From positions 1,178,001 to 1,242,000 of the forward strand of contig MU008168.1 in assembly GCA_010909165.1 (NCBI GenBank): a stretch of 64,000 nucleotides of DNA, read 5' to 3'. Positions 20,540 to 45,484 of the stretch are shown one piece after another. The stretch is from Anthoceros angustus. Lineage: Eukaryota > Plantae > Anthocerotophyta. A program made the position numbers and the translations under genes. Each line of letters opens with the position of its first letter. Positions within the stretch are counted from its first letter, which is position 1. The notes under the pieces are model-generated. The model saw nothing but the letters and a program-made list of their open reading frames with translations, was not told where the DNA came from and did not search any database.

Positions 20540-22944
20540 CTACAGTTGCTGTTTCCTAAGGTCCTTCTGCAATGCATTCTGCTCACTCCAGTGACGGAAA
20601 GCTTCCCTTACAGGATTGAGCTCTGCATCCTCTATCTGAGCCTGAGAGGTGACATTGTCTATCCAGAAAGACCACACCGGAGTAGTGTGGTCCAACAGGG
20701 GGCCACACTCAGGAGCACCACATTGTGCAAAAATGTTTGCATAATGCTCTTCACCTCGCTGGATGGTTCTAACCTTGAATGTTTAGCATCATTCATGGTT
20801 GCCATCAAGTTCTGGGCATATGAGCTGGGCTGCCGAAAATTGTGGAAGTCGTTGTCTACAAGGACCAAGCCTTCTGACGGTGCAAGTGGCAGGATTATGC
20901 GGGAGTGTCGAGCCAGTGACAGAGGTATCACGTCAGGGGAAGCACTCCCATAACACAGCCACAGCTGTTCCCACCATCTTTCTGATCTGAAAGCAAATCA
21001 GCCAACAGACAACTCTTGACACTCCAGCAAGCAGTACAACCACCAAATGCACACCAGTGCCAGAACAGACAGAACCCGACATCATACAAAATCGTGTGTA
21101 CCTGATGAAGCATAAAGGACTCGCCAGTGATGGACAATCTCAGGAGACGGACATTTCCGCAAATCTCAATCTGAGAACTACAGGAGCAGGAGATGATGTG
21201 CCGAAAATGTGCAGTCCTGATTTTGTCTTTGCTGTCAGGCTCAAACAACCACCTTGCCCTTGCTGTAGATTCATCATCTTCTGCCCCATCTGGAACCTGG
21301 CTTTCTTCATCCAAAGATGATTGGTCATCTTCCGGAATGCTCACACCACTGTCACAATCATCCAGCACCTCCGGGACAACCGCCGATTCATCTTCGGAAG
21401 ACCGACTACCCCTGCGGTTAAAGTAGGCAGGCTTGTTCACGTCTTTGTACTTGCTCCGAGCGGTGTAATTATGGAAAGGATGCCTTCCTGCCAATTGACA
21501 ACAGCCAATGTCACGGGTACTGCTACACGTCCTCCTAACCAAGCTTTCGGTGCCTCAATTGGCTGACAACCTGAAATGCTGATAATATGTTGTTCAGCTC
21601 TGTCACTCGATCTTCACTTGCTGCCATTGAACCAGAGTGATTGATGTCAAGCACAGCCGGTGGTAGTAGATACTCGTATGTGCGGGTAAAACACATCTTT
21701 CTTGAATCGAAGGACCTGCAGAACCAGGATGGTCAGTGCCGAAAACGGCAGTTATGACTGAAACATTCCACACATTGAGCTTAAGTCGAGTCAGACCTGG
21801 GCACTGGGACAACAGAAAACACTTTTATGCTTGCAGGTAAGTGAGCATTGATACTTTCCGCCAATGCAAGCCCGTCCCTGTCATGGACCCATTCTGCTTC
21901 TGGGACTTCCATCTTCATAGAAATGACTGTGCTTATGGAGTGCACCTGAGCTGAACGTAGAAACACAATTAGAACCTTTTGATCTGCGTCACATTCTACC
22001 AACCCAATCACAATGACGGGCAGCTGAAGAGCAACCTCCTCAAATCTAGCAATTTGAGGTGCAGTTACACTAGGACCTTCCAGTCGTGCTAACGACTGGT
22101 AACATATAGTGCATCAGACTTTGACACATACAGAATCTCGTAGGGCACGACGGTTACCCCTTTATCAGTTCGGCTGCTGCGTGCCCATCCAAGTCTGTGA
22201 AGATTCCCAAAGTTACTAGCAAGCATTCCATGAGCCGCCAATATGGCTTTCTCCAGCTCTGCTTCAACGGCTGCAAGAATACAGACCGGAGAAAGCATAA
22301 TACTAGCAGCAGCTCAGCCATTGTAGCTTGGACAGAAGCTACTTACTGGGGACTCCTGTAGACCCTTGCAACTGCAGTCCTGCAAAAACCCGAGTGACTT
22401 CAGGACAACCGCATACTTTCCTCTCAAGCATGATAACCAAATGTCGATCATTTGCTAATCTATTTGGGCTGATCCTTCTACCAACCTTTGTACTCGGTTC
22501 CAACATAGCCAACCCAGAAGCAAACCTTCTTCTTCACCCTCCCATCACCAGGAGCAGTAGCAGACGGTTCCAGCAGCCCGTCACTTCCCTCACCACAGGG
22601 CAAAGCTCAACTGAAGTTCTTTCTGCCATCCTCCATGAAGTCCTCCTACAAGAGTGACCTGATCCACCCTTAGTCTCCAACAGTCCCAGAAATTTTCCTC
22701 TGGTGAATGCTCGAGAGCTTACTTTTCCTGCATACATGACAGCAAGACAGATGATCACCACATTCCGCTTCTATGACCCAACAGGATGCACACCCACGAC
22801 ATAAGAAGGACAACATGATAGGATGTACGCCATCACTCACTCACTTGAGTCACATTGCCCGTGTCCCTTGGCCAGAGTCTGGAAAGAGGGCGGCACCAGG
22901 GTGCAGAGCTTGCAGCTGCTCCACCACACTGCGCTGCTACGCAT
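20540..22944 (-). CDS. tRNA pseudouridine synthase (TruA/PUS1 family), copy 2, full length
   Basis: Same 5' exons as copy 1 (ATG 22,944) plus [41 protein letters not shown] and C-terminus ..DLRKQQL* (stop 20,540-42). A few 1-bp indels. Confidence 0.88.
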
Positions 22945-23684
22945 GGCACCCGAATGCTTCAAAATTTTGCCTCACAGCACACAGTGTGCCAAATACAGTC
23001 TTGTCTCAAGTCCTGTTAGGCAGGACGGCGGATTTCCTCTACATACATGTATTCGGTATCATAAATCTCACACTGATAATATAAAATGGAATCAAATCGA
23101 TGCTTAGTGTTTTCTGCTCGCTGTTTTCGCTTGGTGTTCTCCATATTAGGAGTTGTTTGGAGAAGAACCTTAAGCATTTTGCGCTTCGATCGGTGTAATT
23201 TAGGTATGCCATGATATAAGTTGTTAAGTACTAAGTTCTATGTCAAGAAATTTATCCAAGAGGACTACAATGGACTTTTTCTTCTAATTCACTTCAGAAG
23301 AAGTTAGAAGCATAGGTAATAGAGAGAATTTAAATGTAAGGTTGAGATTGAGCTAATTATTATCTAGCATGTAAAATCGGCGTTTATTTAATACCATATA
23401 GGTAGTGGAGAGCTATTGATTTGGAAAGCCTTACATCTATGACACCATATAACTAGAGAAAGTTATTGATTCAAAACCCGGATGTAAGGAACAATTATGC
23501 AATAAAGAAAGTTGTTGGTACGATTTAAAAATCTGGATACAATGTCAAGTTGACTATTTCTCGATTGCACACCACACAAATAAAACTATTAATATATTAT
23601 TTTATAAAATGATAAAGTTGTGAATCCTCTTCTCTCAAGCATGGAGCTCCCTAGCCTAATGGAAAGCATCTTACTTCTAATAAA

Positions 23685-24404
23685 GGGATTGCGGGTTCGA
23701 ATCTCAGCGTTAGGGATTGCGAGTTTGAATCCCGCTGAGAGAAATCTAGTAACTTGTTGCATTGCATCATTTGAGTTCCTGCCAAGAAACATGAAAATAT
23801 GGGTTCCTATGATCTGAGGATCATCCCGCCGAGAGTACTCTGGCAACTTGTTTCATTGCATCGTCTAGCAACTTGTTCCATTGCATCGTTTGAGTTCGTG
23901 CAGGAAACATGAGTTCATGGAGGAAACTTCAGATAGTAAACATGGGGCTCATCCCGCCAAGAGTACTCTGGCAACGTGTTCCATGGGCAAACTATGAGTT
24001 CATGGAGGAAACTTAAGATAGTAAACATGGGGCTCATCCCGCCAAGAGTACTCTGGCAACGTGTTCCATTGGCAAACATGAGTTCATGCAGGAAACTTCA
24101 GATAGTAAACATGGGGCTCATCCGCCGAGAGTACTCTGGCAACGTGCATCGTTTGAGTTCGTGCAGGAAACATGAGTTCATGGAGGAAACATGGGTTCCG
24201 CCGAGAGCTCATGGAGGAAACTTCAGATACTAAACATGGGGCTCATCCCGCTGAGAGTACGGAGGAAACATGGGTTGCCGCCGAGAACTCATGGAGGAAA
24301 CTTCAGATAGTAAACATGGGGCTCACCCGCCGAGAGTACTCTGGCAACGTGTTCCATTGCATCGTTTCAGTTCGTGTAGGAAACATGAGTTCATGGAGGA
24401 AACT
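23685..24404. repeat. Degenerate ~100-bp tandem satellite, copy R2
   Basis: Near-identical to 1,895-2,618. Confidence 0.9.
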
Positions 24405-26118
24405 TGTGCCCGCGCAGAAGATCTGACATCAGGCAGACAGGTCCATTCCGATGTCCTGAGTAGTGTGCTTAACCCTGATGTATTTGTCGGGAGCTGCCTG
24501 GTGGAAATGTATGCAAGATGTGGGAGGTCGGATGATGCTCGTACAATCTTTGACAAGTTGGACTCGAGAAATGTGGTCACATGGAATACGCTGCTTGGAG
24601 GGTATGCTGAGGGTGGGCGTGGGCAAGAAGCCCTTGCGCTCTATGCAAGTATGCAAGAGGAGGAATCACTCTGCCTGACCATGTCACGTTTTGTGCCTCC
24701 TCAAAGCATGTGGGTGGTAGCAGTGGAACACTACACCAGGGAATGCGGCTTCATTCACAAATACAGGAAGCAGGTCTAGGGCATTGGAGCAGGAAGTCAG
24801 CTACATGACCAGTTTCAGGAGATGGGGCTGCAAGTTGACGTGGTCATTTCAGGCTGCCTGGTGGACATATATGCAAACTGTGGGAGCTTAGAGGATGCCC
24901 GCAGGGTGTTTGACGAGTCAGCCACAAGAGATGTCGTGACTTGGACTGCCATGCTCACTGCGTACGAGGAGCATGGTCTAGCCAAGAAGCGCTGTCTCTG
25001 TATGTGGTTGTGGGCAGCTGCCTAGTGGACATGTATGCGAAATGTGGGTGCTTGGATGATGCTCGGAGCGTGTTCTACACTCTGGATACCAGAGCCATCC
25101 TGACATGGAATGTGATGTTTGCAGGATATGTCTTGCACGGGCTGGGGCAGGAGGCCCTTGATCTCTATGCCGTCATGCATCACCGTGGAATCACGGCCGC
25201 TGATCATGTTACATTCGCCCGTCTTCTAAAGGCATGTGCTCGCATGGGAGCATTGCACACGGGGCACCAGCTCCATGCTCAGGTTCGAGAGAGATGTTTG
25301 AAAGCGGATGTGGTTGTGGGCAGCTGCCTGGTGAACATGTATGCAAAATGCGGGAGCTTGGACTGAGCCTGCAGAGTGTTTGAAAGCCTGCCCACAAAGA
25401 ACGAGGTGACATGGAGTGCGGTAGTTCTTGCAGCGTATGGTCAGCACGGGATGGGTCAGGAAGCTCTCATGTGCTACGACAAAATGGTGATGGCAGGCGT
25501 CCAGGCGAATGAAGTCCCGTTCCTTTCAATTCTCTCTGCCTGCAGTCATGCTGGCCTGGTGTGGGAAGGTCTGCAGTACTTCAAATCCATGGACAGATAT
25601 CACGGCATAGCTCCCAGAGCTGAGCACTATGCCTGTATGATACATCTCCTGGGACGTGCCGGACGCTTCACAGTGGTAGAAGAGCTCTTGTCAAGTATGC
25701 CGATGCAGCCTACTCTTTCCTTTCCATGTTAATGTCTCTGCTGGGCTTCCTGCAGGAAGCACAGTAATGTATCTCTCGCGGAGAACAAGTCTTCGATCTG
25801 GCAGTGCGTCTGCAGCCCACAAATGCCGCAGCATACATGTTGATGTCATAGATGTACGCTGATGCGGGCCTTCCAGAGGACGCCCATAGGGTGGACAAGC
25901 GCAGGAAGACGGAAAGTGCTGCGTGGAAAGAGCCAGGCTGGAGCTGGATAGCGCATGACGAGGAAGTGCACACCTTTCTGGCGGGCCGCGTCCAGAACTC
26001 ACAGCATAGTCAAGTGTATGACATGTTAGCCGAGGTAACCTGTAAGCTTAAGGAGGCAGCACAGGCAGAACAGAGCGTGTGCTCGGTATCCTCATCTCTG
26101 TCCGAGGGTCCCTCATGA
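24405..26118 (+). pseudogene. PLS-class PPR E+ pseudogene (copy B)
   Basis: Nearly identical to 2,619-4,331, with the same frameshifts and premature TAG (~25,849). Confidence 0.88.
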
Positions 26119-26746
26119 TGCGTCCCTCTGCCCTCTACCACGTGCAGGTCTTGAGAAATGGATGGTGTGCATTGCTTCTGGGAAGCTACGTGTATCCACG
26201 ACTTGCTCCGAAGACAGAAGACAGCTCACCTTGGGAGCGAGCATCAGGTGGCACAGGAATATACCTGTTCTGTTGTACATAGCAGTCTTGGTGAGATGAC
26301 AGAGAGCATTGCTTGACGTGGTGAAACACGAACCCAGCAAACAGTGTACGGATTGGGGCTGGACATCTCGCCTCCTCGAAACTATGGAAACTGTCAGGAG
26401 TCGGTCTCATCCGATTCCTTTCATGAAAGGGCCATCTTCAAGGACGAAAGAGAGAGAGTGCAGCGCTCCTGTAGTCCAAAATGTAGTCCGAAACCACTGG
26501 TGTCAGGAATGCCTCGTCGTGCAAAGTCTACAGTGTAGACAGCTTTGTAACAAGTATGTAGCTAGAGGCGCCTTTGCAGGCGTGCAGAAGTCGGAGGCGT
26601 GCAGTGCACGCTTCTCCGCGCCGCTGGCCAGCACTGGCCCAGGAGGAGTGGATTCCACTCTCTCTGGAGTGGGACGCCCTTGGTTCTGCTTGCCTTCTTT
26701 TGCAAGTCCTCCTCACAGGGTGAGACGTTGTTGTGAAGGTTGGGCT

Positions 26747-29700
26747 ATGGCGGATCCATCTCTTCCTGCCGGCGCCGCGCCGGTGGACCTGCTCCAGAGC
26801 CTCGAGTCCCGCTCGCCGCACCTGCGTGCTTTGCTTGCAGACCTGGAGTCCCACTCGCGACAGCCGTCGGAACTGCCGTCTGTTGATTTGTGGGGAAGCT
26901 ACTTCAATTGCGACTGCGAGGACGGGGAATGTCACCACCGCGAGGAATGGCACTGGGAGGTGCGCTTGCGTCTGCTCACAGCTATGGGCAGATGCCGGTC
27001 GCTCACGACAATTCGACTGAATCCTCGGCGGAAGATGGGTCACAGCGTGAGGCAGGACGAGGCGGTGGCGCTCTTATCAGGCTTGCAATACAACTTTGGG
27101 CTGACGGTGCTGGATCTGTATGGCTACAAGGGTTTTGGGACGGCAGCAGCCTGCCTGCAGTTGAGTGCCATCATCGACAGAACTTATCCCCCACTGGAAT
27201 CCCTCGGTCTGCAATATGTGGGATTGAGTGCAGAAGGCCTGGGTGCCATCGCTGCAGCCCTTGGACGCAATGCCAGCTCATCAGTGCTGTCCAGCTTGTC
27301 TCTGTGTGGGAACGACATTGGGAATGCTGTCGGGGCGCAACACTTGGCCGACATCCTTACCAACTCGCCCAAGCTCCGCATACTCTCGATGAGCAACGTA
27401 GGGATGGACGAGGAAGGAGCCGTGGTGATTGCACAGGCCCTGGCGCATACCACCACACTGGCCGAGCTCACAATCGGAGATCCTGCGCCCCGGAATCCAA
27501 ACCAGCGCGCCCATGTTCCTCGTTCCATTGCTCCAAGCTTTGGTGTGGCACACCCCAGGCGGATCCTCCAGCTGCTGTTTCTGGCAATCACTCCATCACA
27601 CGGCTTGTCCTTGGGTGTCCGGGAGGCCAGGAGGCTGTGGAGCCGGGGCTGGGAGAAGCCCTGGCTCAGGTGCTTCACCAACCGGGCTCTGAAAGACCTC
27701 AAACTATCCAGCTTCTTCGTCACACGCGGATTGGGAGCTCTGCGAAAACAGCAGCATCACCAACTCCTGGTGTTCACTCGCCGCAGTCGGAGGATGATGA
27801 CATGGATCCCATGCTGACCACCATCCTGGATGAGTGCAAGACTGTTGAGAGGTGCAGATCCAGTTTGACAAGCCCTTTGGTCCGTCCAGCTTCACCAAGG
27901 CGTTTTTCCAAGGGTTCCTGCAGAAAACCGCAGCATCAACAGGCTGGTGTTGGATGGCTGGGATGGGCTGGACGACGAGATGTTTGAAGACCTGATTCAA
28001 TCCCTGTCCACCAACACCCACCTCAGGCTGGAGCATCTCCATCAAGGGCACCTCATGGGAAAAGCAAGGCAGGGCGAACGTCTGCAGAAAGCGAGATGCA
28101 TTGCGAGTGCAGCCGGAGCTGGTGCGTTGCTTGCAGACCTGGAGTCCACTCGCCAGGGCGGTCCAGGTCGTGGTTAGTGTTGATTCGTGACGCGACTCCC
28201 ATGGAACTGGGAGGACTGTTGATTCGTGGGGAAGCTACTTCAATTGCGACTGCGAGGACGGGGAATGTCACCACCGCGAGGAATGGCACTGGGAGGTGCG
28301 CGTCTGCTCACAGCTATCGGCAAATGCCGGTCGCTGAGGAAGATTCATCTGAATCCTCGGCGGAAGAGGGTCACAGCGTGAGGAGGACGAGGCGCTGGCG
28401 CTCTTATCAGGCTTGCAACACAACTTTGGGCTGAGGTGCTGAATCTGTATGGCTACAAGGGTTTTGGGACGGCAGCAGCCTGCCTGCAGTTGAGTGCCAT
28501 CATAGAACTTCTTCCTGACTTGCTCGGTCTGCAATATGTGGGATTGAGTGCAGAAGGACTGGGTGCCATCGCTGCAGCCCTTGGACTCATCAGCTGTCCA
28601 GCTTGTCTCTGTGTGGGAACGACATTGGGAATGCTGTCGGGGCGCAACACTTGGCCGACATCCTTACCAACTCGCCCAAGCTCCGCATATCTGGATGAGC
28701 AACATAGGGATGGACGAGGAAGGAGCCGTGGTGATTGCACAGGCCCTGGCGCATACCACCACACTGGCTGGGCTTAGAATCGGAGATCCTGCGCCCCGGA
28801 ATCCAAACCAGCGCGCCCATGTTCCTCGTTCCATTGCTCCAAGCTTTGGTGTGGCACACCCAGGCGGATCCTCCAGCTGCTGTTTCTGGCAATCACTCCA
28901 TCACACGGCTTGTCCTTGGGTGTCCGGGAGGCCAGGAGGCTGTGGAGCCAGGCTGGGAGAAGCCCTGGCTCAGGTGCTTCGCACCAACCGGGCTCTGAAA
29001 GACCTCAAACTATCCAGCTTCTTCGTCACACGCGGATTGGGAGCTCTGCGGGAAAACAGCAGCATCACCAAACTCCTGGTGTTCACTCGCGGCAGTCGGA
29101 GGATGATGACATGGATCCCATCCTGACCACCATCCTGGATGAGTGCAAGACTGTTGAGGAGGTGCAGATCCGGTTTGACAAGCCCTTTGGTCCGTCCAGC
29201 TTCACCAAGGCGTTTTTCAAGGGTTGCTGCAGAAAACCGCAGCATCAACAGGCTGGTGTTGGATGGCTGGGATGGGCTGGACGACGAGATGTTTGAAGAC
29301 CTGATTCAATCCCTGTCCACCAACACCAACAGGACCTCAGGCTGGATCACATCTCCATCAAGGGCACCTCATGGGAAAAGCAAGGCAGGGGCGAACGTCT
29401 GGAGAAAGCGTTGGGAGCTGCGAGTGCAGCCGCAGCTGCGTGCGTTGCTGCAGACTTGGAGTCCCACTCGCCAGTGCTGGGTGCGCCCACGGAACTGGGA
29501 GGATCCTGTTGATTTTGTGCTACTTCAATTGCGACTGCGAGGACAGGGAATGTCACCACCGCGAGGAATGGCACTGGGAGGTGCGCTTGCGTCTGCTCAC
29601 AGCTATCGGCAGATGCCGGTCGCTCAGGAAGATTCAACTGAATCCTGCGGAAGAGGGTCACAGCGTGAGGCAGGACGAGGCGGCGCTCTTATCAGGCTTG

Positions 29701-32700
29701 CAACACAACCTTGTGCTGGAGGAGCTGGAATCTGTTTGGCTACAAGGGTTTGGGACGGCAGCAGCCTGCCTGAGGCACTGATTGCCGTCATCGACAGAAC
29801 TCATCGCTCACTGGACTTCCTCGGTCTGCAATCTGTGGGATTGAGTGCAGAAGGACTGGGTGCCATCGCTGCAGCCCTTGGACGCAATGTCAGCTCTTCA
29901 GTGCTGTCCAGATTGTCTCTGTGTGGGAACGACATCGGAATGCTGTCGGGGCGCAACACTTGGCCGACATCCTTACCAACTCGCCCAAGCTCCGCAACTC
30001 TGGATGAGCAACATAGGCATGGACGAGGAAGGAGCCGTGGTGATTGCAGGCCCTGGCGCATACCACTACACTGGCTGGGCTTAGAATCGGAGATCCTGCG
30101 CCCCGGAATCCAAACCAGCGCGCCCATGTTCCTCGTTCCATTGCTCCAAGCTTTGGTGTGGCACACCTGGCGGATCCTCCAGCTGCTGTTTCTGGCAATC
30201 ACTCCATCACACGGCTTGTCCTTGAGTGTCCGGGAGGCCAGGAGGCTGTGGAGCCGGGGCTGGGAGAAGCCCTGGCTCAGGTGCTTCACCAACCGGGCTC
30301 TGAAAGACCTCAGACTATCCAGCTTCTTCGTCACACGCGGATTGGGAGCTCTGCGGGAAAACAGCAGCATCACCAAACTCCTGGTGTTTCACTCGCGGCA
30401 GTCGGAGGATGATGACATGGATCCCATCCTGACCACCATCCTGGATGAGTGCAAGACTGTTGAGGAGGTGCAGATCCGGTTTGACAAGCCCTTTGGTCCG
30501 TCCAGCTTCACCAAGGCGTTTTTCAAGGGTTGCTGCAGAAAACCGCAGCATCAACAGGCTGGTGTTGGATGGCTGGGATGGGCTGGACGACGAGATGTTT
30601 GAAGACCTGATTCAATCCCTGTCCACCAACACCCACCTCAGGCTGGATCACATCTCCATCAAGGGCACCTCATGGGAAAAGCAAGGCAGGGGCGAACGTC
30701 TGGAGAAAGCGTTGGGAGCTGCGCGAGTGCAGCCGCAGCTGCGTTGCAGACTTGGAGTCCGAGTCGCCAGTGCTGCAGAACTCCCATCTGTGGATTTGTG
30801 GGAAGCTATTTCGATTGCCTTTGCCAGGAGGCCTACAGGAGTGTCAACACCGGGGCAGTGGCAGTGGTACGTACGCCTGCGCCTGCTCACAGCTATCGGC
30901 AAATGCCGGTCGCTGAGGAAGATTCATCTGAATCCTCCGGAGGAGGGCACTTACAGCGTGAGGAGGTAGAGGCGCTGGCGCTGCTATCAGGCTTGCAACA
31001 CAACCTTGTGCTGGAGGAGCTGAATCTGTATGGCTACAAGGGGTTTGGGACGGCACCTGCCTGCAGGCATTGACTGGCGTCATCGACAGAACTTATCTCT
31101 CACTGGACTTGCGGTCTGCAATATCTGGGATTGAGTGCAGAAGGACTGGGTGCCATCGCTGCAGCCCTTGGACGCAATGCCAGCTCTCAGTGCTGTCCAG
31201 ATTGTCTCTGTGTGGGAACGACATCGGAATGCTGTCGGGCGCAACACTTGGCCGACATCCTTACCAACTCAAGCTCCGCAATCTGGATGAGCAACATAGG
31301 CATGGACGAGGAAGGAGCCGTGGTGATTGCACAGGCCCTGGCGCATACCACTACACTGGCTGGGCTTAGAATCGGAGATCCTGCGCCCCGGAATCCAAAC
31401 CAGCCGCGCCCATGTTCCTCGTTCCATTGCTCCAAGCTTTGGTGTGGCACACCCTGGCGGATCCTCCAGCTGCTGTTTCTGGCAATCACTCCATCACACG
31501 GCTTGTCCTTGGAGTGTCCGGGAGGCCAGGAGGCTGTGGAGCCAGGGCTGGGAGAAGCCCTGGCTCAGGTGCTTCGCACCAACCGGGCTCTGAAAGACCT
31601 CACACTATCCAGCTTCTTCGTCACACGCGGATTGGGAGCTCTGCGGAAAACAGCAGCATCACCAAACTCCTGGTGTTCCACTCGCGGCAGTCGGAGGATG
31701 ATGACATGGATCCCATGCTGACCGCCATCCTGGATGAGTGCAAGACTGTTGAGGAGGTGCAGATCCGGTTTGACAAGCCCTTTGGTCCGTCCAGCTTCAC
31801 CAAGGCGTTTTTCAAGGGTTGCTGCAGAAAACCGCAGCATCAACAGGCTGGTGTTGGATGGCTGGGATGGGCTGGACGACGAGATGTTTGAAGACCTGAT
31901 TCAATCCCTGTCCACCAACACCAACACCCACCTCAGGCTGGATCACATCTCCATCAAGGGCACCTCATGGGAAAAGCAAGGCAGGGGCGAACGTCTGGAG
32001 AAAGCGTTGGGAGCTGCGCGAGCTGGCTGCCGCTGCAGCTGGGAGTGCAGCCGCAGCTGCTGCGTTGCTCGCAGACTTGGAGTCCGAGTCGCCAGTGCTG
32101 CAGAACTCCCATCTGTGGATTTGTGGGAAGCTATTTCGATTGCCTTTGCCAGGAGGCCTACAGGGAGTGTCAACACCGGGGCAGTGGCAGTGGTACGTAC
32201 GCCTGCGCCTGCTCACAGCTATCGGCAAATGCCGGTCGCTGAGGAAGATTCATCTGAATCCTCAAGGGAGGGCGGGCACTTACAGCGTGAGGGAGGTAGA
32301 GGCGCTGGTGCTGCTATCAGGCTTGCAACACAACTCTGTGCTGGAGGAGCTGGGGCTGTGTGGCTACGTGGGCTTTGGGACGGCACGCTGCCTGCAGGCA
32401 CTGACTGGCGTCATGGAGAGATGTTATGTCTCATTGGACTTGCTGGATCTGCGATATCTGGGATTGAGTGCAGAAGGACTGGGTGTCATCGCTGCAGCCC
32501 TTGGACGCAACGGCAGCTCAGTGCTGTCCAGATTGTGTCTTTGTGGGAACGACATCGGGAATGCTGTCGGGGCGCAACACTTGGCCGACATCCTGAGGAA
32601 TCCGATCCTCCGCAGTCTCTGGATGAGCGATATTGGCATGGACGAGGAAGGAGCCGTGCTGATTGCAGAGGCCCTGGCGAACACCACCACCCTAGCCGAG

Positions 32701-35700
32701 CTTAAAATCGGAGATCCTGTGTTCCTTGTTCGACTGCTCCAAGCTTTGGTGTGGCACACCCTGGTGGATCCTCCAGCTGCTGTTTCTGGCAATCACTCCA
32801 TCACACGGCTTGTCCTTGAGTGTCCGGGAGGCCAGCAGGCCGTGGAGCCGGACTGGGAGAAGCCCTGGCTCAGGTGCTGCGCACCAACCGTGCTCTCACT
32901 GACCTCAGACTTGCCAGCTTCTTCGTCACACGCGGATTGGAAGCGCTACCTGAAAACAGCAGCATCACCCAACTCCAAGTAAGTCACACGCGGGATTCGC
33001 AGGATGATGACATGGATCCTATGCTGATCACGATCCTTCAGGAGTGCAAGAATGTCCAGCAGCTGCAGCTTCAGTTTTATAAGCCCTTTGGTCCATCCAA
33101 CTTCTCCAAGGCGTTTTTCCAAGGGTTGCGGGATAATCGTAGCATCAAGACGCTTGTGTTGGATGACTGCGAAGGATTGGATGACTACATGTTCCAGAAC
33201 TTGATGCGGTCTCTGGGACGCAACTGCAACAACGTCCTGGAGAACATTTCCATCAAGAAAACAACCTGGGAAAGCGAAGGCAAAGGAATATACATCCAGA
33301 ATGCTCTCTCAAGGAACATGCGCAGAAGAAGCGCTGCTCCGCAGGGTAGGTGCCCCAAGCCAGTAGCTTGCTACCCTTGTCCTGATTTGTATCTACTGTC
33401 AGAACCCACGAACCCAGATGTATACTGACCCCTTCTCACTTGTGCAGGTTCGGAAGGAGTGCCACCACCGGTCACGGCAACTGTGGCAACCTCTGATGCC
33501 GCAGCAGGTAATGAAACTACATGAATCCATGGATTTGATCCAACCACTTCCAAGCTGTTGTTGTTGTTGCAACTAGTTTGAATGCCTGTACCGAATGCAC
33601 CACTTGATGCTGCTGCTGGCAGGCAGTCTGATGATTGACTGATTGGCTGTTTTGTTTTCACCACAATTTCCAGTTGCTGTTCCTGAGGAGCTCAGTGCCC
33701 TGCTTGCCGAGCTCGACTCACCTTCGCCTACACTCAGTCGTCTTCCTCGTGTGGAAGCGTTTGGGCACTTGTTCGAGAGGGACGTGGAACATCCAAAGGT
33801 GGAACTTGAACTGCGCATGCGCCTTATGAAGGCTATCGGGAAATGCCCCACACTCAGATTCATAGATCTCGACCCTCTTGGGCGTCGAAATTACAGCGTG
33901 ACGATGGCAGAGGCGACGGCGCTGCTGGAAGGCCTGAGGTCGAATGCAATAGTGCAACGGCTGGACTTGAGTGGCTTCCTTGGTTTTGGAACAGGTGAAG
34001 TCTGCGCTGCAATCGCCGCTATCTTGCAATCCAGCCGCACCTTGCAAGAACTGAATATGGGATTCACTGGCATGACTGCCGAAGGACTGGCTTGCATGCG
34101 AAATAATAGCAGCACTGTGCTTCGCACCTTGAACCTTGCTGGAAACACGACTGTGGGAGATGGTGTTGGAGCTCAACACCTGGCTGATATCCTGACCAGC
34201 ACTCCCGCTCTTCGCCACCTGGGGATGTGGGATATAGGGATGGATGCGGCGGGAGCATTGATAATAGGGGATGCTCTGGCACAGAACACCACACTTGACA
34301 GGCTGGACATAGGATTTAATCAAGCGTCAAGGCCAAAGCAGGCAGGGATGATGGCCACGCTGTTAGCTCGAGCATTCACCCTGGCATGCTGGACCAAATT
34401 GCTCCCAAGCTTTTCTGTTAACGAGTCTGTCACACATCTCCAGCTGGAAGTATGGGGAGCAGGACAGCAGCCTGTCATCGCTGAGTTGGGAGAAGCTGTG
34501 GCCCGCATGCTGCGGTCGAACATGACTTTAAGGCATCTCGATGTATGTAGCTGCTTTATAAGCCAGGGATTGGAGGGATAACAGCAGCGTTATCCGTGTG
34601 ACAGTCCGACATGGTAGCTCTAGTGCTGAGGACTAAGAGGATGTGATGCCAATCCTGCAGACCAGACAGTGGAAAAGTTTACAATTAGCTCAGAACAGTT
34701 TGGGACCTTTGGGATCATCCGACCTCCCAAGACGTTTTTCAAATCGTTGCAGGACAATCGTTACCTCAACAGGTTGGTGTTGGATGGCTGGAAAGGGTTG
34801 GACGACCATATGTTCCAAGACCTGTTGCGGGCTCTGCAAGTGAACACCAATTTGGAGAATATATCGTTCGAGAACACTGTGTGGAAAAGTCAGGGAAAAG
34901 GAGCTGCAGTGGATGAGGTACTACGGCAAAACAGGGAATACCGAAAAGCTCTGGCAGGGGCTCCAACAATGCCAGTGAAATCATGTCGCCTCGTACTTTG
35001 TGGATTTCCACAAGCAGGTGAGCGACATGCTGAACCCAAAATTTTACAATCCCAAATGGCGTAGTTTGCATACTTCATTGCAGTTGTTTCGGTCTTTCAC
35101 TACAGCTGTTTTCTTGTCTTTATTGCCGTTGTTTTCGTCTCCAGAGTGAAATTGGTGGGAAATGTTGATGTTCAGGGAAAACCACGATACGGAATACGTT
35201 AATGAGTATGCAAACACACGAAAACGATGTGGAGATCGAGGGTGAAACGATTTCGAAACGTATACCTCGAACTCTTGGGTTTGAGGTTGAGGTGATAAAA
35301 GATGGTCCAGCCTTGAGAATAACCGTTTGGGATCTTGCAGGGCACAAGGAGTTTCATGCTCTTCACGATGTGGTCTTTCCTGCTGTGAATAGCTCTTCTC
35401 TCTTCTTGTTTGTCTATAACCCGTTCAAACTGGGTGGTAATTATTCAAGTGCGGACATGAAGGAGAGAAAGGATTTTCGAGATGAAATTATTTATTGGCT
35501 TAAATTTATTGCTTCCAACTCGCGGTTAGCTCAACAGGTGAAACCTTATGTTCATGTGGTGGTAACATTTAATGACAAGCTTGAAGTGGGGATGTTTTCG
35601 TTTGAAATACTGGACGAATTACGGGTGATGAAGAAAAAGTTTATGGCTATTGTGGAAATATCTGATGATCCCGCTTTTATCAATGGACAAAATTGGAAAG

Positions 35701-38028
35701 ATGTGTATGAAGTACGCAGGCTTGTACAGGAAAAGCTACAACAACGTATTAGCACATTGGCTCCGATTCCTAGCATTTGTGAGCAGATCCGTGTACATGT
35801 ACGGAATTGGGCTGAGGATAAACATGGTATGCCAATCATTTCTATTAAAAAGTTTATCGAGTTGTTTTACAGCACATGTAAGGTGGCAATAGGGCATCCA
35901 CTCATCTCAAAGTCTTATAGAACATTTGTTAGAGACTTCATGGACAAGAAGGATAGCTGGAAAGTAGTAGCATCATATCTCAAGGATTCAGGGGAGATCA
36001 TATATTTCCAAATGTCACAGCTTATGGTCATCAACCTCCGATGGTTAGGAATGGGCGTTTTGGTCAGTTAGTATATTTGGTGAACGGACAATAGATTGGC
36101 TTCAAGTTCAAAATGGGTTCATTAGCAAATTTGAGTAGCCTTCTAAAATGTCTTTGAACAAGGTAGGGCTTGATGAAACCATTGTGAGCGAGGAACAATT
36201 CATCCAATTGATGTGTGAGTTGCACCTTGCCATGAAAGTGGAGATGAGGAAGGAGAAGTCAATATTTTGTTCCAATATGTATGTATAAAGAAGAAGATGG
36301 ATTAGGAGTTGATCAAGCAGTTAGTATGGCCTTCACGGTGGTAATCTTCATGATTATATCTTTATGGGTTTGCGTCTACAATGTGATGATCAAGATTGTA
36401 CATTCCTCACACCAGGATTTTTTCCTAGGTTACAGGTTCGTAACTTTTCTGAAGTTGAATATCTTTTGTTTTATGTCCTGAAACTTCTTCTTGTTTTATT
36501 ATTATTAACTACTCTAGTCTCATTGTTCCTATATATTGTAGGTACTTTTATACAAATATTGTTTGAAAAAAGGCTGGGTTGATGAGGAAAGACCAATTGA
36601 TTCAGAATAAAATTGGAGCCTAATGTCCTTTTAATATCTGCAGAGGCAATGGATATCTTTGTGGAATTTAATGCCAAAGTGGGTTGTTACATAGATATAT
36701 TGGCTCGATCTACTCAAGGCTATTTAGAGTCCATGTCATTTCTGGAGGATCATATTGAATCTCAGATTCGGTCATTTTGTGCTTCGCATGAGGGTTGTGC
36801 AGGGGTCACACTAGTTGAAGGTGTTCTTCGACATGAATGTGTAATGTCCCTCACTCTATGCAGATACAGGAGATACGAGTGTATTCTGACAAACGAGCTA
36901 GTTGAAAAGGTGGTTGATGCAAAGGATCGACGTCTTGCACACTACACGCAATCTTGGAAGTGTATGCGGCGGCCGACTCATCATTTTAAAGGCCAACATA
37001 GAGTATGCAACGTGGTGGATGGTCATGTCATTTTGGGACAAAAGAGGACCTTGCAAAGCGAGCGAGTTCCAAGGTTTGAAGCTCTCAATTGTGGATAGTT
37101 TGTGTTGCACTAGGTGTCCTTCTTCTCTTCACATGTAGTTTCTAAGTAGCTTTGCACAAGTAGGCCGTTTCTTGCATACTCTAAGGCTATACATTGCAGG
37201 ATTGAAATCTAGTAGTTGCTTTGGTGGAACTTCTACAGCTATCCCATAGTAGCTTTGCGAAAGAACAACTGATTGTTGGGAGTAGTTATCCTAACCATGG
37301 TGTGGAAGAAGGTAATCGAAGAGGTTTGGCAATGATTGTGAGTGCGGAAGAGGATAGACTGGAGGATCAGACAGAGGGCGACTTGATTTTCTTTTCAACA
37401 CATTGGGCTTTCATCTGATATTTTAGTGGACAGTTCGAGTGTCAAAGCACATTTAGGAAAGTTGCCGATCTCTGCCTTGAAAAGGACGATTGCTTTGTGT
37501 GTTGCATCAATGCTCATGGGGGGATTGAAGAAAATGGCAGAGACTACATTGAAATTGGAAAACCACCGGAGAAGCTATATGTTTACGATGACATCGTGAA
37601 GCCCATCTTGAATCCAAGTGGTTGAAAGACAAGCCTAAGGTGTTTTGATCAATGCTTGTCGAGCCATCCAAAGTGGGAAAGCTAAGGACTCAAGTCGAGG
37701 GTAGCCAAATTGTGAGTGAGAGAGCCGGAGAAGATCTCGCCTGCTTTCCGAGAAGGATTGTCTCATCTTCTTCTCGACCAGTCATGGACAACAATCGTTT
37801 AGAGATGTCAACAATGGCTCAAACTTTATCATAGCTTTGATGGAAGCCATCATTGAGGGGTCGGAAAAAAAGGATGATATGTTCAGCATTTTAACATCAG
37901 TGATTGCCAAGGTCACGGAGATGCCACGTTGGCTCCGAAATCAAGAAGGGTCTTATGAGAGGAGACCCCAGTGTCCGGTGTTTTCCTCCACACTCACGAG
38001 AAAGCTTTGGTGGTGGCCTCGGCCTTAG
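26747..38028 (+). CDS. Giant LRR(5+1 domains)-ROC-COR-caspase-like protein (copy B); frameshifted in this sequence
   Basis: ATG 26,747 (MADPSLPAG). Intact 312-aa LRR ORF 33,643-34,581. GFPQAG|KTTIR P-loop. 289-aa ROC ORF 35,202-36,071 (WDLAGHKEFHALHD). CCINAHGG at ~37,500, INACRA at ~37,657, C-terminus QCPVFSSTLTRKLWWWPRP* (stop 38,026-28). Confidence 0.85.
26790..33345 (+). repeat. Coding tandem array of five ~1.3-kb LRR-domain units
   Basis: MDP.LT.ILDEC marker at ~27,800, 29,110, 30,417, 31,707 and 33,010. Confidence 0.92.
37310..38028 (+). other. Caspase-like catalytic domain of copy B gene
   Basis: DCFVCCINAHGGIEENG is in one frame here (His codon 37,515-17). aatgcttgtcga = NACR (Cys codon 37,657-59). 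C-terminal STLTRKL motif intact. Confidence 0.85.
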
Positions 38029-38213
38029 GTGCAAGGAAGCAGCCCGGCAAAAGTTGGATTGAGCATGAGCAGAAGGTTCACACATTTCGAGTTGCAGACC
38101 AAGAGCATCAGGAAGCACCATTGCTATATGCATTGCTGGAAGACCTAACCACTAAGCTAAAGGAGGCTGGGTATGTAGACTTCGAGGAAAGCTGGCATGG
38201 AGAGCTGAATTGA
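38029..38213 (+). pseudogene. Orphan PPR E2/E+ tail fragment (copy B)
   Basis: Same sequence as 20,275-20,459. Confidence 0.75.
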
Positions 38214-38292
38214 ACACAAGGCAGATGTCGTAGTAGTAACCTTCATTTATCAGCAATTAAGCTTAGTACATTCAAAGAGTGATTTCTTCTGG

Positions 38293-40696
38293 CTACAGTT
38301 GCTGTTTCCTAAGGTCCTTCTGCAATGCATTCTGCTCACTCCAGTGACGGAAAGCTTCCCTTACAGGATTGAGCTCTGCATCCTCTATCTGAGCCTGAGA
38401 GGTGACATTGTCTATCCAGAAAGACCACACCGGAGTAGTGTGGTCCAACAGGGGCCACACTGGGAGCACCACATTGTGCAAAAATGTTTGCATAATGCTC
38501 TTCACCTCGCTGGATGGTTCTAACCTTGAATGTTTAGCATCATTCATGGTTGCCATCAAGTTCTGGGCATATGAGCTGGGCTGCCGAAAATTGTGGAAGT
38601 CGTTGTCTACAAGGACCAAGCCTTCTGACGGTGCAAGTGGCAGGATTATGCGGGAGTGTCGAGCCAGTGACAGAGGTATCACGTCAGGGGAAGCACTCCC
38701 ATAACACAGCCACAGCTGTTCCCACCATCTTTCTGATCTGAAAGCAAATCAGCCAACAGACAACTCTTGACACTCCAGCAAGCAGTACAACCACCAAATG
38801 CACACCAGTGCCAGAACAGACAGAACCCGACATCATACAAAATCGTGTGTACCTGATGAAGCATAAAGGACTCGCCAGTGATGGACAATCTCAGGAGACG
38901 GACATTTCCGCAAATCTCAATCTGAGAACTACAGGAGCAGGAGATGATGTGCCGAAAATGTGCAGTCCTGATTTTGTCTTTGCTGTCAGGCTCAAACAAC
39001 CACCTTGCCCTTGCTGTAGATTCATCATCTTCTGCCCCATCTGGAACCTGGCTTTCTTCATCCAAAGATGATTGGTCATCTTCCGGAATGCTCACACCAC
39101 TGTCACAATCATCCAGCACCTCCGGGACAACCGCCGATTCATCTTCGGAAGACCGACTACCCCTGCGGTTAAAGTAGGCAGGCTTGTTCACGTCTTTGTA
39201 CTTGCTCCGAGCGGTGTAATTATGGAAAGGATGCCTTCCTGCCAATTGACAACAGCCAATGTCACGGGTACTGCTACACGTCCTCCTAACCAAGCTTTCG
39301 GTGCCTCAATTGGCTGACAACCTGAAATGCTGATAATATGTTGTTCAGCTCTGTCACTCGATCTTCACTTGCTGCCATTGAACCAGAGTGATTGATGTCA
39401 AGCACAGCCGGTGGTAGTAGATACTCGTATGTGCGGGTAAAACACATCTTTCTTGAATCGAAGGACCTGCAGAACCAGGATGGTCAGTGCCGAAAACGGC
39501 AGTTATGACTGAAACATTCCACACATTGAGCTTAAGTCGAGTCAGACCTGGGCACTGGGACAACAGAAAACACTTTTATGCTTGCAGGTAAGTGAGCATT
39601 GATACTTTCCGCCAATGCAAGCCTGTCCCTGTCATGGACCCATTCTGCTTCTGGGACTTCCATCTTCATAGAAATGACTGTGCTTATGGAGTGCACCTGA
39701 GCTGAACGTAGAAACACAATTAGAACCTTTTGATCTGCGTCACATTCTACCAACCCAATCACAATGACGGGCAGCTGAAGAGCAACCTCCTCAAATCTAG
39801 CAATTTGAGGTGCAGTTACACTAGGACCTTCCAGTCGTGCTAACGACTGGTAACATACATAGTGCATCAGACTTTGACACATACAGAATCTCGTAGGGCA
39901 CGACGGTTACCCCTTTATCAGTTCGGCTGCTGCGTGCCCATCCAAGTCTGTGAAGATTCCCAAAGTTACTAGCAAGCATTCCATGAGCCGCCAATATGGC
40001 TTTCTCCAGCTCTGCTTCAACGGCTGCAAGAATACAGACCGGAGAAAGCATAATACTAGCAGCAGCTCAGCCATTGTAGCTTGGACAGAAGCTACTTACT
40101 GGGGACTCCTGTAGACCCTTGCAACTGCAGTCCTGCAAAACCTGAGTGACTTCAGGACAACCGCATACTTTTCCTCTCAAGCATGATAACCAAATGTCGA
40201 TCATTTGCTAATCTATTTGGGCTGATCCTTCTACCAACCTTTGTACTCGGTTCCAACATAGCCAACCCAGAAGCAAACCTTCTTCTTCACCTCCCATCAC
40301 CAGGAGCAGTAGCAGACGGTTCCAGCAGCCCGTCACTTCCCTCACCACAGGGCAAAGCTCAACTGAAGTTCTTTCTGCCATCCTCCATGAAGTCCTCCTA
40401 CAAGAGTGACCTGATCCACCCTTAGTCTCCAACAGTCCCAGAAATTTTCCTCTGGTGAATGCTCGAGAGCTTACTTTTCCTGCATACATGACAGCAAGAC
40501 AGATGATCACCACATTCCGCTTCTATGACCCAACAGGATGCACACCCACGACATAAGAAGGACAACATGATAGGATGTACGCCATCACTCACTCACTTGA
40601 GTCACATTGCCCGTGTCCCTTGGCCAGAGTCTGGAAAGAGGGCGGCACCAGGGTGCAGAGCTTGCAGCTGCTCCACCACACTGCGCTGCTACGCAT
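38293..40696 (-). CDS. tRNA pseudouridine synthase (TruA/PUS1 family), copy 3, full length
   Basis: Nearly identical to copy 2; ATG 40,696, stop 38,293-95. Confidence 0.88.
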
Positions 40697-41439
40697 GGCA
40701 CCCAGAATGCTTCAAAATTTTGCCTCACAGCACACAGTGTGCCAAATACAGTCTTGTCTCAAGTCCTGTTAGGCAGGACGGCGGATTTCTACATACATGT
40801 ATTCGGTATCATAAATCTCACACTGATAATATAAAATGGAATCAAATCGATGCTTAGTGTTTTCTGCTCGCTGTTTTCGCTTGGTGTTCTCCATATTAGG
40901 AGTTGTTTGGAGAAGAACCTTAAGCATTTTGCGCTTCGATCGGTGTAATTTAGGTATGCCATGATATAAGTTGTTAAGTACTAAGTTCTATGTCAAGAAA
41001 TTTTATCCAAGAGGACTACAATGGACTTTTTCTTCTAATTCACTTCAGAAGAAGTTAGAAGCATAGGTAATAGAGAGAATTTAAATGTAAGGTTGAGATT
41101 GAGCTAATTATTATCTAGCATGTAAAATCGACGTTTATTTAATACCATATAGGTAGTGGAGAGCTATTGATTTGGAAAGCCTTACATCTATGACACCATA
41201 TAACTAGAGAAAGTTATTGATTCAAAAACCCCAGATGTAAGGAACAATTATGCAATAAAGAAAGTTGTTGGTACGATTTAAAAAATCTGGATACAATGTC
41301 AAGTTGACTATTTCTCGATTGCACACCACACAAATAAAACTATTAATATATTATTTTATAAAATGATAAAGTTGTGAATCCTCTTCTCTCAAGCATGGAG
41401 CTCCCCTAGCCTAATGGAAAGCATCTTACTTCTAATAAA

Positions 41440-42295
41440 GGGATTGCGGATTCGAATCTTAGTGTTAGGCGATTGCGAGTTTGAATCCCGCTGAGAGAAC
41501 TCTAGCAACTTGTTGCATCATTTGAGTTCGTGCTAAGAAACATGAAAATATGGGTTCCTAGGATCTGAGGATCATCTCATCGAGAGTTTGGCAACGTGTT
41601 CTATTGCATCGTTTGAGTTCGTGCAGGAAACATGAGTTCATGGAGGAAACTTCAAATAGTAAACATGGGGCTCATGCCGTCGAGAGTACGGAGGAAACAT
41701 GGGTTCCCGCCGAGAACTCATGGAGGAAACTTCATATAGTAAACATGGGGCTCATCCCGCCAAGAGTACTCTGGCAACATGTTCCATTGCATCGTTTCAG
41801 TTTGTGTAGGAAACATGAGTTCCCACCAACAGTACTCTAGCAACTTACTCTCTGGCAACTTGTTTCATTACATTATCTTGCAACTTGTTCCATTGCATCG
41901 TTTGAGTTCGGATAGTAAACATAGGGTTCATCAAGAAATGTCATGGGTTCCTGTTGGGAGTACTCTGGCAACTTGTTCCATTGCATCATTCGAGTTCGGA
42001 TAGTAAACATGGGGTTCATTAGGAAATATGAGTTCTTGCTGGGAGTACTCTGGCAACTTGTTCCATTGCATCGTTTGAGTTCGGATAGTGAACATGGGGT
42101 TCATTCGTTAGTGCAGAAAATATGGGTTCGAATCCCACTGAGAGTACTCTGACAACTTGTTCCATTGCATCGTTTGAGTTCGTGTAGGAAACATGGGGTT
42201 CATGCTAATGCCGGCTGGAGTACTCTAGCAACTTGTTCCATTGCATCCTGTGTTTTCATGATTTGAGTTGTGTAGGAAACATGAGGTTCATGCTA
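41440..42295. repeat. Degenerate satellite, copy R3 (diverged; right boundary of the duplication)
   Basis: Same motifs (agtactctggcaacttgttccattgcatcgtttgagttcg) but clearly diverged from R1/R2 from ~41,448 onward. Confidence 0.88.
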
Positions 42296-43375: not shown

Positions 43376-43435
43376 TTTTCGCTCCTGTTTTTGCTACCTC
43401 TCGTTCATCGATCACTTCCGACGCAGCGGTTGGTC

Positions 43436-45470: not shown

Positions 45471-45484
45471 TCCACCTTGCTGAG

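What the first reader, a model, noticed from the sequence alone, without database searches (positions are those of the whole stretch)
26747..38028. Second Roco-caspase paralog with a different sensor length and diverged ROC-COR
Seen: copy B has the same domain order but 5+1 LRR domains and many amino-acid changes in the ROC region (HQEF vs HKEF, SKHIP vs SKRIP, KWAENEH vs NWAEDKH), so it is a distinct gene rather than an assembly echo. A third unit is implied upstream of the window by the TruA copy at 1-1,088. Inference: a tandem cluster behaving like a resistance-gene cluster.
Basis: partly seen in the sequence, partly recalled or inferred. Interest (0 to 1): 0.75.

Follow-up and report, generated by a model that had tools for sequence, protein, structure and literature searches.

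The report
Second tandem Roco-caspase gene copy
A non-seed land plant, probably a hornwort, has two neighbouring copies of a giant gene that joins repeated leucine-rich sensor domains, a GTP switch and an animal-type caspase; the second copy is a distinct gene with fewer sensor domains, but the assembly here is too error-ridden to show that it works.

Summary
Copy B (26747-38028) has the same LRR / Roc / COR / caspase order as copy A. It has 5+1 whole-LRR-domain modules against 8+1 in A, and the quoted residue changes are there.

B is a different sequence, not an echo. Substitution divergence is 2.3-7.7% in LRR, Roc and COR, against about 0.1% in the near-identical flanks. The module difference needs at least two unequal-crossover events.

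The window gives no sign of a third Roco unit upstream. The array reads TruA-like / PPR+Roco A / TruA-like / PPR+Roco B / TruA-like. The partial third unit lies downstream (39621-41789) and has no Roco gene.

As assembled, B has about 65 frame breaks. All are small indels and none is a nonsense substitution (0 stops seen, 10.9 expected). Substitutions among modules show purifying selection. Most breaks are therefore probably sequencing errors.

R-gene-like behaviour is shown only structurally: tandem duplication, module copy-number change and conversion-like mosaicism. Diversifying selection is not shown.

The scan has noted this family before, on this window and on other pieces of the same genome.

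The parts
21870..39620 (.). Tandem repeat unit B (17.75 kb): TruA-like gene, 85-bp minisatellite, decayed PPR gene, Roco-caspase gene B, PPR tail fragment. Unit A is 1-21869.
   Evidence: Self-BLAST and repeat families. Unit start is defined as the point equivalent to window position 1.
26747..38028 (+). Roco-caspase gene B. About 10.7 kb coding in four exons as modelled, about 3,570 codons if the frame breaks are ignored.
26880..28215 (+). LRR module B1, closest to A1 (95.7%). 10 frameshifts relative to the A1 frame, all in its second half.
28216..29518 (+). LRR module B2, closest to A3 (97.1%) and A2 (95.5%). 13 frameshifts.
29519..30787 (+). LRR module B3, closest to A5 (98.6%). 9 frameshifts.
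30788..32112 (+). LRR module B4, closest to A6 (97.8%). 13 frameshifts.
32113..33642 (+). LRR module B5, the more diverged type, closest to A8 (96.6%). 3 frameshifts.
33643..35017 (+). Divergent sixth LRR module plus pre-Roc linker, ending in the first half of the P-loop (..LVLCGFPQAG). It holds a 312-aa open stretch with Pfam LRR_6. Frame changes and a stop near 34570-34670 are shared with A.
35018..35175 (+). Intron 1 (GT..AG, phase 1). It splits the P-loop codons GFPQAG|GKT. 12% substitutions against A.
   Evidence: Sequence read
35176..36435 (+). Roc plus COR-A exon. Open for 300 codons (35169-36068), then about 7 frame breaks between 36020 and 36340.
36436..36645 (+). Intron 2 (GT..AG, phase 0), between ..FFPRLQ and AMDIFVEFNAKVG..
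   Evidence: Sequence read; homologue alignments
36646..37069 (+). COR-B exon (3' end approximate). It hits the region after COR-A in many Roco relatives.
   Evidence: (mid_B)
37262..38028 (+). Caspase (Peptidase_C14) exon, 5' end approximate. His-motif codons INAHG at 37506 and Cys-motif codons INACRA at 37648 are both present but lie in different frames as assembled. About 6 frame breaks.
38028..38213 (+). PPR E2/E+ tail fragment that starts at the Roco stop codon. It marks the left breakpoint of the repeat unit. The same fragment follows gene A and ends at 20459.
   Evidence: 45% identity, E 3e-12 to the tail of the in-unit PPR
38293..40051 (-). TruA-like gene copy 3 of 3. Support for pseudouridine synthase is weak (Pfam E 0.08). 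It is 99.9% identical to the copy at about 20540-22300.
39621..41789 (.). Partial third unit C: part of the TruA-like gene plus spacer, with no PPR and no Roco gene. About 99.7% identical to the head of unit B up to about 41300.
23905..24339 (.). 80-85-bp minisatellite. It is also at 2117-2553, with a diverged copy at 41876-42203 where unit C ends.
24400..26118 (+). Decayed PLS-type PPR gene of unit B. Its frame breaks and an internal deletion are shared with the copy in unit A, to which it is 99.7% identical.
4959..20274 (+). Roco-caspase gene A, the reference copy, with 8+1 LRR modules.

Best explanation
B is a genuine second member of a lineage-specific LRR / Roc / COR / caspase gene family, made by tandem duplication of an 18-22 kb unit.

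Shown: the two copies then diverged by 2-8% in LRR, Roc and COR. They gained or lost whole 445-codon LRR domains in at least two separate events, giving 5+1 modules against 8+1. Long tracts stayed or became near-identical (PPR plus 5' flank; caspase C-terminus through the TruA-like gene).

Inferred: the near-identity reflects gene conversion or a recent secondary duplication.

Inferred from the lesion spectrum: most of the roughly 65 frame breaks in B are deletion-biased sequencing or assembly errors, not decay. The real gene may therefore encode a protein of about 3,600 residues.

Inferred from domain logic only: the stacked LRR domains bind a ligand or a guarded host target, the Roc-COR GTPase switches or oligomerises, and this brings the C-terminal caspase domains together and activates them to cut death or immune substrates. 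A and B would then differ in what they sense.
For: Unit structure and two full copies. Module counts and the pairing of B modules with non-adjacent A modules. Mosaic identity, 99.7-99.9% blocks beside 92-97% blocks. Substitution floor about 0.1% against 2.3-7.7% in B-specific parts. Roc, P-loop, COR and caspase homology. Both catalytic motif strings are present in both copies. Lesion spectrum: 108 frameshifts and 0 nonsense substitutions in 12 modules; 300 single-nucleotide codon variants, 45% synonymous (24% expected), 0 stops (10.9 expected); private variants 48% synonymous, 61 of 112 at third positions. Between A and B there are 172 indels for 468 substitutions, only 14% are multiples of 3, and they are enriched near homopolymers and CHG sites. 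In the near-identical blocks one-base indels outnumber substitutions. Roc dN/dS is 0.47.
Against: No open frame spans the gene in either copy. No transcript or near-identical protein for this locus was found. Frame changes and a stop at 34570-34670 are shared by A and B, and so are the PPR lesions, so some damage may be real and old. dN/dS between A and B is about 1 in COR and LRR. Indel density is also high in the 93%-identical Roc-COR part, where short-read polishing should have worked, and multi-base deletions of 4-11 nt are not classic homopolymer errors. Function is pure inference. None of the best 150 Roc relatives carries a caspase.
Confidence: 0.68

Rival explanations
1. A and B are both real decayed pseudogenes. 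The tandem pair is a dead relic of the family, and the small deletions are genuine mutations.
For: About 65 frame breaks in B and at least 70 in A. Frame changes at 34570-34670 are shared, and the adjacent PPR is damaged in the same places in both units. dN/dS is about 1 in COR and LRR between A and B. No transcripts were found. The indels include 4-11 nt events clustered with substitutions.
Against: Not one nonsense substitution where about 11 are expected among modules, and none that is not indel-caused in Roc-COR-caspase. Even private substitutions are 48% synonymous. Indels are about as many as private substitutions per module and outnumber substitutions in the 99.9% blocks, far above natural ratios. 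Both catalytic motifs are retained.
Confidence: 0.22
2. B is an assembly artefact: either a false tandem duplication of one real unit built from noisy reads, or two haplotypes joined head to tail.
For: 3-4 kb blocks are 99.7-99.9% identical and differ mainly by one-base indels. Scan notes report assembly-inflated repeats elsewhere in this genome (s1-655482, s1-688672; not checked by me). Reads cannot be inspected here.
Against: Substitution divergence of 2.3-7.7%, with some codon-position bias, is 20-70 times the noise floor. Module number and order differ through at least two events. The junction from Roco stop to PPR tail to TruA-like gene occurs twice, so at least one real duplication junction exists. 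There are no N gaps. The lineage looks like a hornwort: the SUV3 gene is at most 74% identical to anything in the database and about equally far (66-72%) from mosses, liverworts and lycophytes. From general knowledge, hornworts are sequenced from haploid gametophytes, which have no second haplotype.
Confidence: 0.08
3. One reading: a larger R-gene-like array that continues upstream with a third Roco-caspase unit and evolves under diversifying selection.
For: Tandem copies, LRR copy-number change and conversion-like mosaicism. Divergence starts just before the start codon, after a near-identical upstream flank. Scan notes list many family members and arrays on other pieces of this genome (not checked by me).
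Against: Only two Roc/COR/caspase copies are in the window. The offset of the PPR tail fragments matches the end of the complete upstream PPR gene in note s1-670473, so the array is bounded on the left. No excess of replacement changes can be shown, and the variable sites lie in linkers.
Confidence: 0.1

Closest known systems
TORNADO1 (TRN1)-type plant Roco proteins: LRR / Roc / COR, e.g. Marchantia polymorpha MARPO_0002s0170 and Riccia hypothetical proteins
   Same: RI-type LRR domain, then Roc with GxxxxGKT and DxxG, then COR-A and COR-B. These are the best matches in 1.84 billion representatives, at 29-36% identity over Roc-COR-A among the top ten hits (35% for the best, P0002).
   Different: The relatives have one LRR domain, rarely two, and no caspase. 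B has 5+1 full LRR domains and a C-terminal Peptidase_C14 domain. Orthology to TRN1 itself was not tested.
Brown-alga LRR-ROCO genes proposed as immune receptors (Teng et al. 2024, PMC11378527; Zambounis et al. 2012 as cited there)
   Same: LRR / Roc / COR genes in a multicellular lineage, with an expanded family, LRR copy-number change, many apparent pseudogenes and a proposed receptor role.
   Different: In brown algae single LRR motifs are shuffled as separate exons and the genes are mostly dispersed. Here a whole 445-codon LRR domain is amplified inside one exon, the genes are tandem, and a caspase domain is attached.
Animal caspases (C14A: caspase-7, -3, -1, -8)
   Same: These are the best solved-structure matches (E 2e-7). 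KPKVFLINACRA aligns with KPKLFFIQACRG, the His motif is INAHG, an SFR motif aligns with SWR, and the C-terminal ..QCPVFSSTLTRKLWW tail is caspase-like.
   Different: Here the domain is fused to a Roco sensor-switch rather than to CARD or DED prodomains. The motif is NACRA, not QACRG. The frame is broken as assembled and activity is unknown.
Plant NLR resistance-gene clusters, and animal NLR/Apaf-1 to caspase platforms (from general knowledge)
   Same: Logic of sensor repeats, nucleotide switch and death effector. Tandem duplicates with unequal crossing-over and conversion.
   Different: No NB-ARC or NACHT domain was found; the switch is a Roc GTPase. The effector protease is on the same chain. 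Diversifying selection is not demonstrated.

Membership tests
ROCO (Roc-COR) GTPases | Roc G-domain with P-loop GxxxxGK[ST] and DxxG | tested here: met
   GFPQAG|GKT across intron 1 and WDLAGH. Pfam Roc 27.6 bits (cut-off 27). LRRK2 Roc is the only PDB hit (E 0.008). 174 Roco-type hits in the big search.
ROCO (Roc-COR) GTPases | COR domain directly after Roc | tested here: met
   No direct Pfam COR hit on B's broken pieces. However, the pieces at 36139-36438 and 36601-37095 match the COR-A and post-COR-A regions of relatives that carry Pfam COR-A.
TRN1-like plant LRR / Roc / COR subfamily | N-terminal RI-type LRR domain homologous to that of the plant and bryophyte relatives | tested here: met
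   The LRR6 and A1 modules hit the N-terminal regions of P0003, P0005, P0010 and P0026 (E 1e-16 to 1e-27), with Pfam LRR_6. Orthology to Arabidopsis TRN1 was not tested.
Caspase / Peptidase C14 | Sequence membership of the C14 fold | tested here: met
   PF00656 E 1.7e-12 on B 37720-38025 and 2.6e-20 on A. Best PDB hits are caspase-7, -3, -1 and -8.
Caspase / Peptidase C14 | Catalytic His-Cys dyad in one continuous reading frame | tested here: inconclusive
   The codon strings for INAHG (37506) and INACRA (37648) are present in B, but about 2 frame breaks lie between them as assembled. A has them at 19746 and 19892, with a local frame slip over the His motif.
NLR / R-gene cluster | NB-ARC or NACHT nucleotide-binding domain | tested here: not met
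   The Pfam scans of B's ORF pieces show Roc, not NB-ARC or NACHT.
NLR / R-gene cluster | Tandem paralogues with unequal crossing-over or conversion in the LRR region | tested here: met
   Two units. 5 against 8 modules, with non-collinear pairing. Mosaic identity.
NLR / R-gene cluster | Diversifying selection on ligand-facing LRR residues | tested here: inconclusive
   dN/dS between A and B is 0.95-1.7 in LRR on 14-49 changes and is inflated by frame-slipped stretches. Among modules the substitutions are mainly synonymous. Variable sites are in linkers.
Decayed pseudogene | Nonsense substitutions and relaxed codon constraint alongside the frameshifts | tested here: not met
   0 nonsense substitutions against 10.9 expected. 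45-48% of single-nucleotide variants are synonymous against 24% expected.

The most novel reading that the evidence does not exclude
A and B are both working, expressed receptors of a hornwort immune or cell-death system. In it a Roc-COR GTPase takes the place of NB-ARC or NACHT and a same-chain animal-type caspase is the executioner. Recognition capacity is tuned by adding or dropping whole LRR domains (5+1 against 8+1) through unequal crossing-over in tandem arrays. That would be a plant analogue of an inflammasome on a single chain. Scan notes elsewhere in this genome suggest a possible gasdermin partner, but none was found among the ten downstream ORFs (43436-62547) scanned against Pfam.
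Probability: 0.3. Interest if true: 0.85.

Novelty: new variant of a known kind. Interest (0 to 1): 0.6.

Why it matters
Land plants are generally said to lack true caspases (general knowledge) and, with TRN1, to use Roco proteins in development. A family that joins a sensor, a Roc-COR switch and a caspase on one chain would be an undescribed route to regulated proteolysis or cell death in plants. Here it duplicates in tandem and changes its number of whole sensor domains.

Copy B supplies the comparison. Two neighbours of the same gene differ in sensor length and in 13% of Roc-COR-A residues, while their flanks are nearly identical. Receptor families under birth-and-death evolution leave that signature.

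There is also a practical point. In this assembly apparent pseudogenes inside repeats should not be taken at face value. The test that compares nonsense substitutions with frameshifts is a cheap way to tell errors from decay.

Tried and rejected
1. The word search with B's Roc ORF gave one 41%-identical fragment. With the intact A1 module it gave nothing at E <= 1e-10. So there is no transcript or close protein for this locus. The length filter also hides full-length relatives.

3. I looked for a caspase in the best 150 Roc relatives and in cluster mates. There was none.

4. Taking the longer allele at every A/B indel in the PPR gene did not restore an ORF. The PPR damage is therefore shared. 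This test could not be used as a clean proof of assembly error.

5. The majority consensus of the LRR modules is not one ORF either. The alignment is confounded by the many indels, so I switched to a protein-guided alignment against the intact A1 module.

6. Codon-wise dN/dS on orthologous modules is inflated by runs of frame-slipped codons, so I give it little weight.

7. Paper searches for Roco with caspase in plants or bryophytes found nothing relevant. The brown-alga ROCO paper is the nearest.

8. The TruA identity of the minus-strand gene is only weakly supported (Pfam E 0.08; no PDB hit).

9. No gasdermin-like domain was found among the larger downstream ORFs.

10. The sigma-70 promoter scan is irrelevant for a eukaryote.

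All searches used single ORF or exon pieces by reference.
Full report
**What the window is**

The sequence is eukaryotic, with introns and PLS/E-type PPR genes. Its intact SUV3 helicase ORF (46092-47873) is at most 74% identical to anything in the protein collection. It lies about equally far (66-72%) from moss, liverwort and lycophyte proteins. This fits a land-plant lineage with no annotated proteins in the database. Other scan notes call it a hornwort, and I support that only by elimination.

**Repeat structure**

Self-comparison shows a head-to-tail duplication.
- Unit A is 1-21869.
- Unit B is 21870-39620.
- A partial third unit C is 39621-41789.

Each full unit carries, in order:
- part of a minus-strand TruA-like gene (weak Pfam support);
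- an 80-85-bp minisatellite (2117-2553 and 23905-24339);
- a decayed PPR gene;
- the large plus-strand gene;
- a 60-residue PPR E2/E+ tail fragment directly at that gene's stop codon.

The tail fragment is 45% identical (E 3e-12) to the tail of the in-unit PPR, and the homology starts at 38028. Unit C has only the TruA-like gene and spacer. It ends where a diverged copy of the minisatellite begins (41876-42203). Only two Roc/COR/caspase copies exist in the window. The array is therefore T / QR / T / QR / T, where T is the TruA block and QR is PPR plus Roco.

**Checking the observation**

- B starts with ATG at 26747 and stops at 38026-38028.
- A B-module probe finds eight 1.3-kb modules in A and five in B (starts 26880, 28216, 29519, 30788, 32113). 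Each gene also has one module only about 56% identical to the rest (A 15944, B 33643).
- The P-loop is split by intron 35018-35175 and reads GFPQAG|GKT. The Roc exon is open for 300 codons in B, with Pfam Roc at 27.6 bits.
- COR-A and COR-B pieces match the corresponding regions of Roco relatives.
- The C-terminal piece is Peptidase_C14 (1.7e-12 in B, 2.6e-20 in A). Animal caspase-7, -3, -1 and -8 are its best solved relatives.

**Is B a different sequence or an echo?**

Identity along the collinear A/B alignment is a mosaic.
- 97% over the first 2 kb of the unit.
- 99.7% from the minisatellite through the PPR to just before the start codon.
- 95.7-98.6% for the paired LRR modules.
- 92-97% from the sixth module through Roc, COR and the first half of the caspase, with up to 12% substitutions in intron 1 and in the presumed third-intron region 37096-37300.
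- 99.9% from the caspase C-terminal half through the PPR tail and TruA-like gene into the next unit (A 19993-24071 against B 37746-41300).

In the near-identical blocks substitutions run at about 0.1%. This sets the noise floor for base calls. The 2.3-7.7% seen in LRR, Roc and COR is far above it.

B modules pair with A1, A2/A3, A5, A6 and A8. The difference of three modules therefore needs at least two separate gain or loss events.

Roc dN/dS is 0.47. Single-nucleotide changes private to B modules are 38% synonymous against 24% expected. B is thus a separately evolving sequence.

A haplotype join cannot be excluded without reads. It is unlikely, for three reasons.
- The junction from Roco stop to PPR tail to TruA-like gene occurs twice.
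- There are no gaps.
- A hornwort assembly would come from haploid tissue (general knowledge).

**The third unit**

That copy is simply the first T of the T / QR / T / QR / T array.

The PPR tail fragments end 1407-1410 nt before the positions equivalent to window base 1. The scan note s1-670473 places the end of a complete 2129-codon PPR ORF 1403 nt before the window. The left breakpoint of the repeat unit therefore lies in the tail of that upstream PPR gene, and the array is bounded there. I could not read the upstream sequence, so this rests on the offset match. The only extra unit is the partial one downstream.

**Broken or mis-sequenced?**

As assembled, B cannot be translated.
- A protein-to-DNA alignment that allows frameshifts, guided by the only intact module (A1), needs 10, 13, 9, 13 and 3 frameshifts in B1 to B5. 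It needs 2-13 in A2 to A8.
- The 3' half of B adds about 17 more breaks: near 34570-34670, 36020-36340, 37365-37420 and 37608-37742.
- A is broken at other places. B's Roc exon and His site read open where A's do not, and A's COR-A piece and Cys site read open where B's do not.

The spectrum of these lesions is not that of decay.
- Across 12 modules there are 108 frameshifts and not one in-frame nonsense substitution.
- Among 300 distinct single-nucleotide codon variants, 136 are synonymous (73 expected at random) and none is a stop (10.9 expected).
- Variants private to a single module are 48% synonymous, and 61 of 112 lie at third positions.
- Each module has 4-17 private substitutions but 3-13 frameshifts.
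- The two stops in A's 3' half both lie inside indel-shifted stretches.
- Over 17.5 kb of A/B alignment there are 172 indels for 468 substitutions. Only 14% are multiples of three. They are missing equally from A and B, and they are enriched near homopolymers (15.7% against 7.1%) and CHG sites (32.5% against 23.1%).
- In the 99.9% blocks one- and two-base indels outnumber substitutions by about 3 to 1.
- The nearby SUV3 ORF is intact, and so is the upstream 2129-codon PPR ORF (the latter per the scan note).

The simplest reading is deletion-biased long-read consensus errors confined to this repeated, perhaps methylated, region. They overlie coding sequence that was under purifying selection until recently. 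Other notes on this genome reach the same view from other loci. I regard it as probable, not proven.

Some points argue for real damage.
- The frame changes near 34570-34670 and the PPR lesions are shared by both units.
- Indels of 4-11 nt clustered with substitutions occur in the Roc-COR part.

**Relatives**

The big search with B's Roc exon found 174 proteins. The best (P0002, Riccia sorocarpa) is 35% identical, and the top ten hits range from 29% to 36%. The named ones are LRR / Roc / COR proteins of Riccia, Marchantia and Diphasiastrum. None of the best 150 hits or their cluster mates has a caspase domain. One or two LRR domains are the rule in them. Papers searched do not describe a Roco-caspase in plants. 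The closest concept is the brown-alga LRR-ROCO family, proposed as immune receptors and rich in pseudogenes (PMC11378527).

**R-gene-like behaviour**

Three structural hallmarks are present.
- Tandem paralogues.
- Unequal crossing-over that changes the number of LRR modules.
- Conversion-like mosaicism, with divergence resuming just before the start codon.

Diversifying selection is not shown. dN/dS between A and B in LRR is about 1-1.7 on few changes and is inflated by frame-slipped runs. Variable residues concentrate at module linkers.

**Limits**

- All three word searches and the one big search are used.
- No reads, RNA data or upstream sequence were available.
- The scan has already noted this family on this window (s1-267829, s1-267838, s1-267896) and on other pieces of the same genome, some described as intact. 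I did not check those.

Noticed in passing
window 38028-38213 and 20275-20459: A 60-residue PPR E2/E+ tail fragment begins exactly at the stop codon of each Roco-caspase gene. It marks the left breakpoint of the duplicated unit, inside the tail of the PPR gene that the scan notes just upstream of the window.
   Followed up: partly
window 2117-2553, 23905-24339, 41876-42203: An 80-85-bp minisatellite sits between the TruA-like gene and the PPR gene in each unit. A diverged copy lies where the partial third unit ends. It is a candidate recombination site for the duplication.
   Followed up: partly
window 24400-26118 and about 2600-4350: The PLS-type PPR gene in each unit is broken at the same places in both copies and has an internal deletion (..EEHGL.. 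runs straight into VVVGSCLVDMY). It looks like a true pseudogene, although the two copies are 99.7% identical.
   Followed up: partly
window 4700-5100 against 26488-26890: A/B identity drops from about 100% to 95-98% within about 60 nt upstream of the Roco start codon. This is either a conversion tract boundary or a sign that the coding part diverges faster than its promoter-side flank.
   Followed up: no
window 1-41800 (both units): Small indels, mostly 1-4 nt deletions, are about as common as private substitutions. They are enriched near homopolymers and CHG sites, while unique genes nearby are intact. This is a base-quality problem of the assembly in repeats.
   Followed up: yes
window 43436-44624 (- strand): Two adjacent ORFs match the Pfam GIY-YIG domain family PF19239 (E 1e-30 and 8e-10). 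They are probably one spliced or frame-broken gene just downstream of the array.
   Followed up: no
window 52885-53850: A 321-codon ORF with an Exo_endo_phos domain of the endonuclease-reverse-transcriptase type. It is probably the endonuclease of a non-LTR retrotransposon.
   Followed up: no
window 43028-43376: A second, unrelated 85-bp tandem repeat (4.1 copies, 86% matches).
   Followed up: no
P0026 (1343 aa) and P0032 (3382 aa), relatives from the big search: These Roco relatives carry two copies of the LRR domain. Whole-domain duplication therefore occurs elsewhere in the family, but not 5-8 fold.
   Followed up: partly
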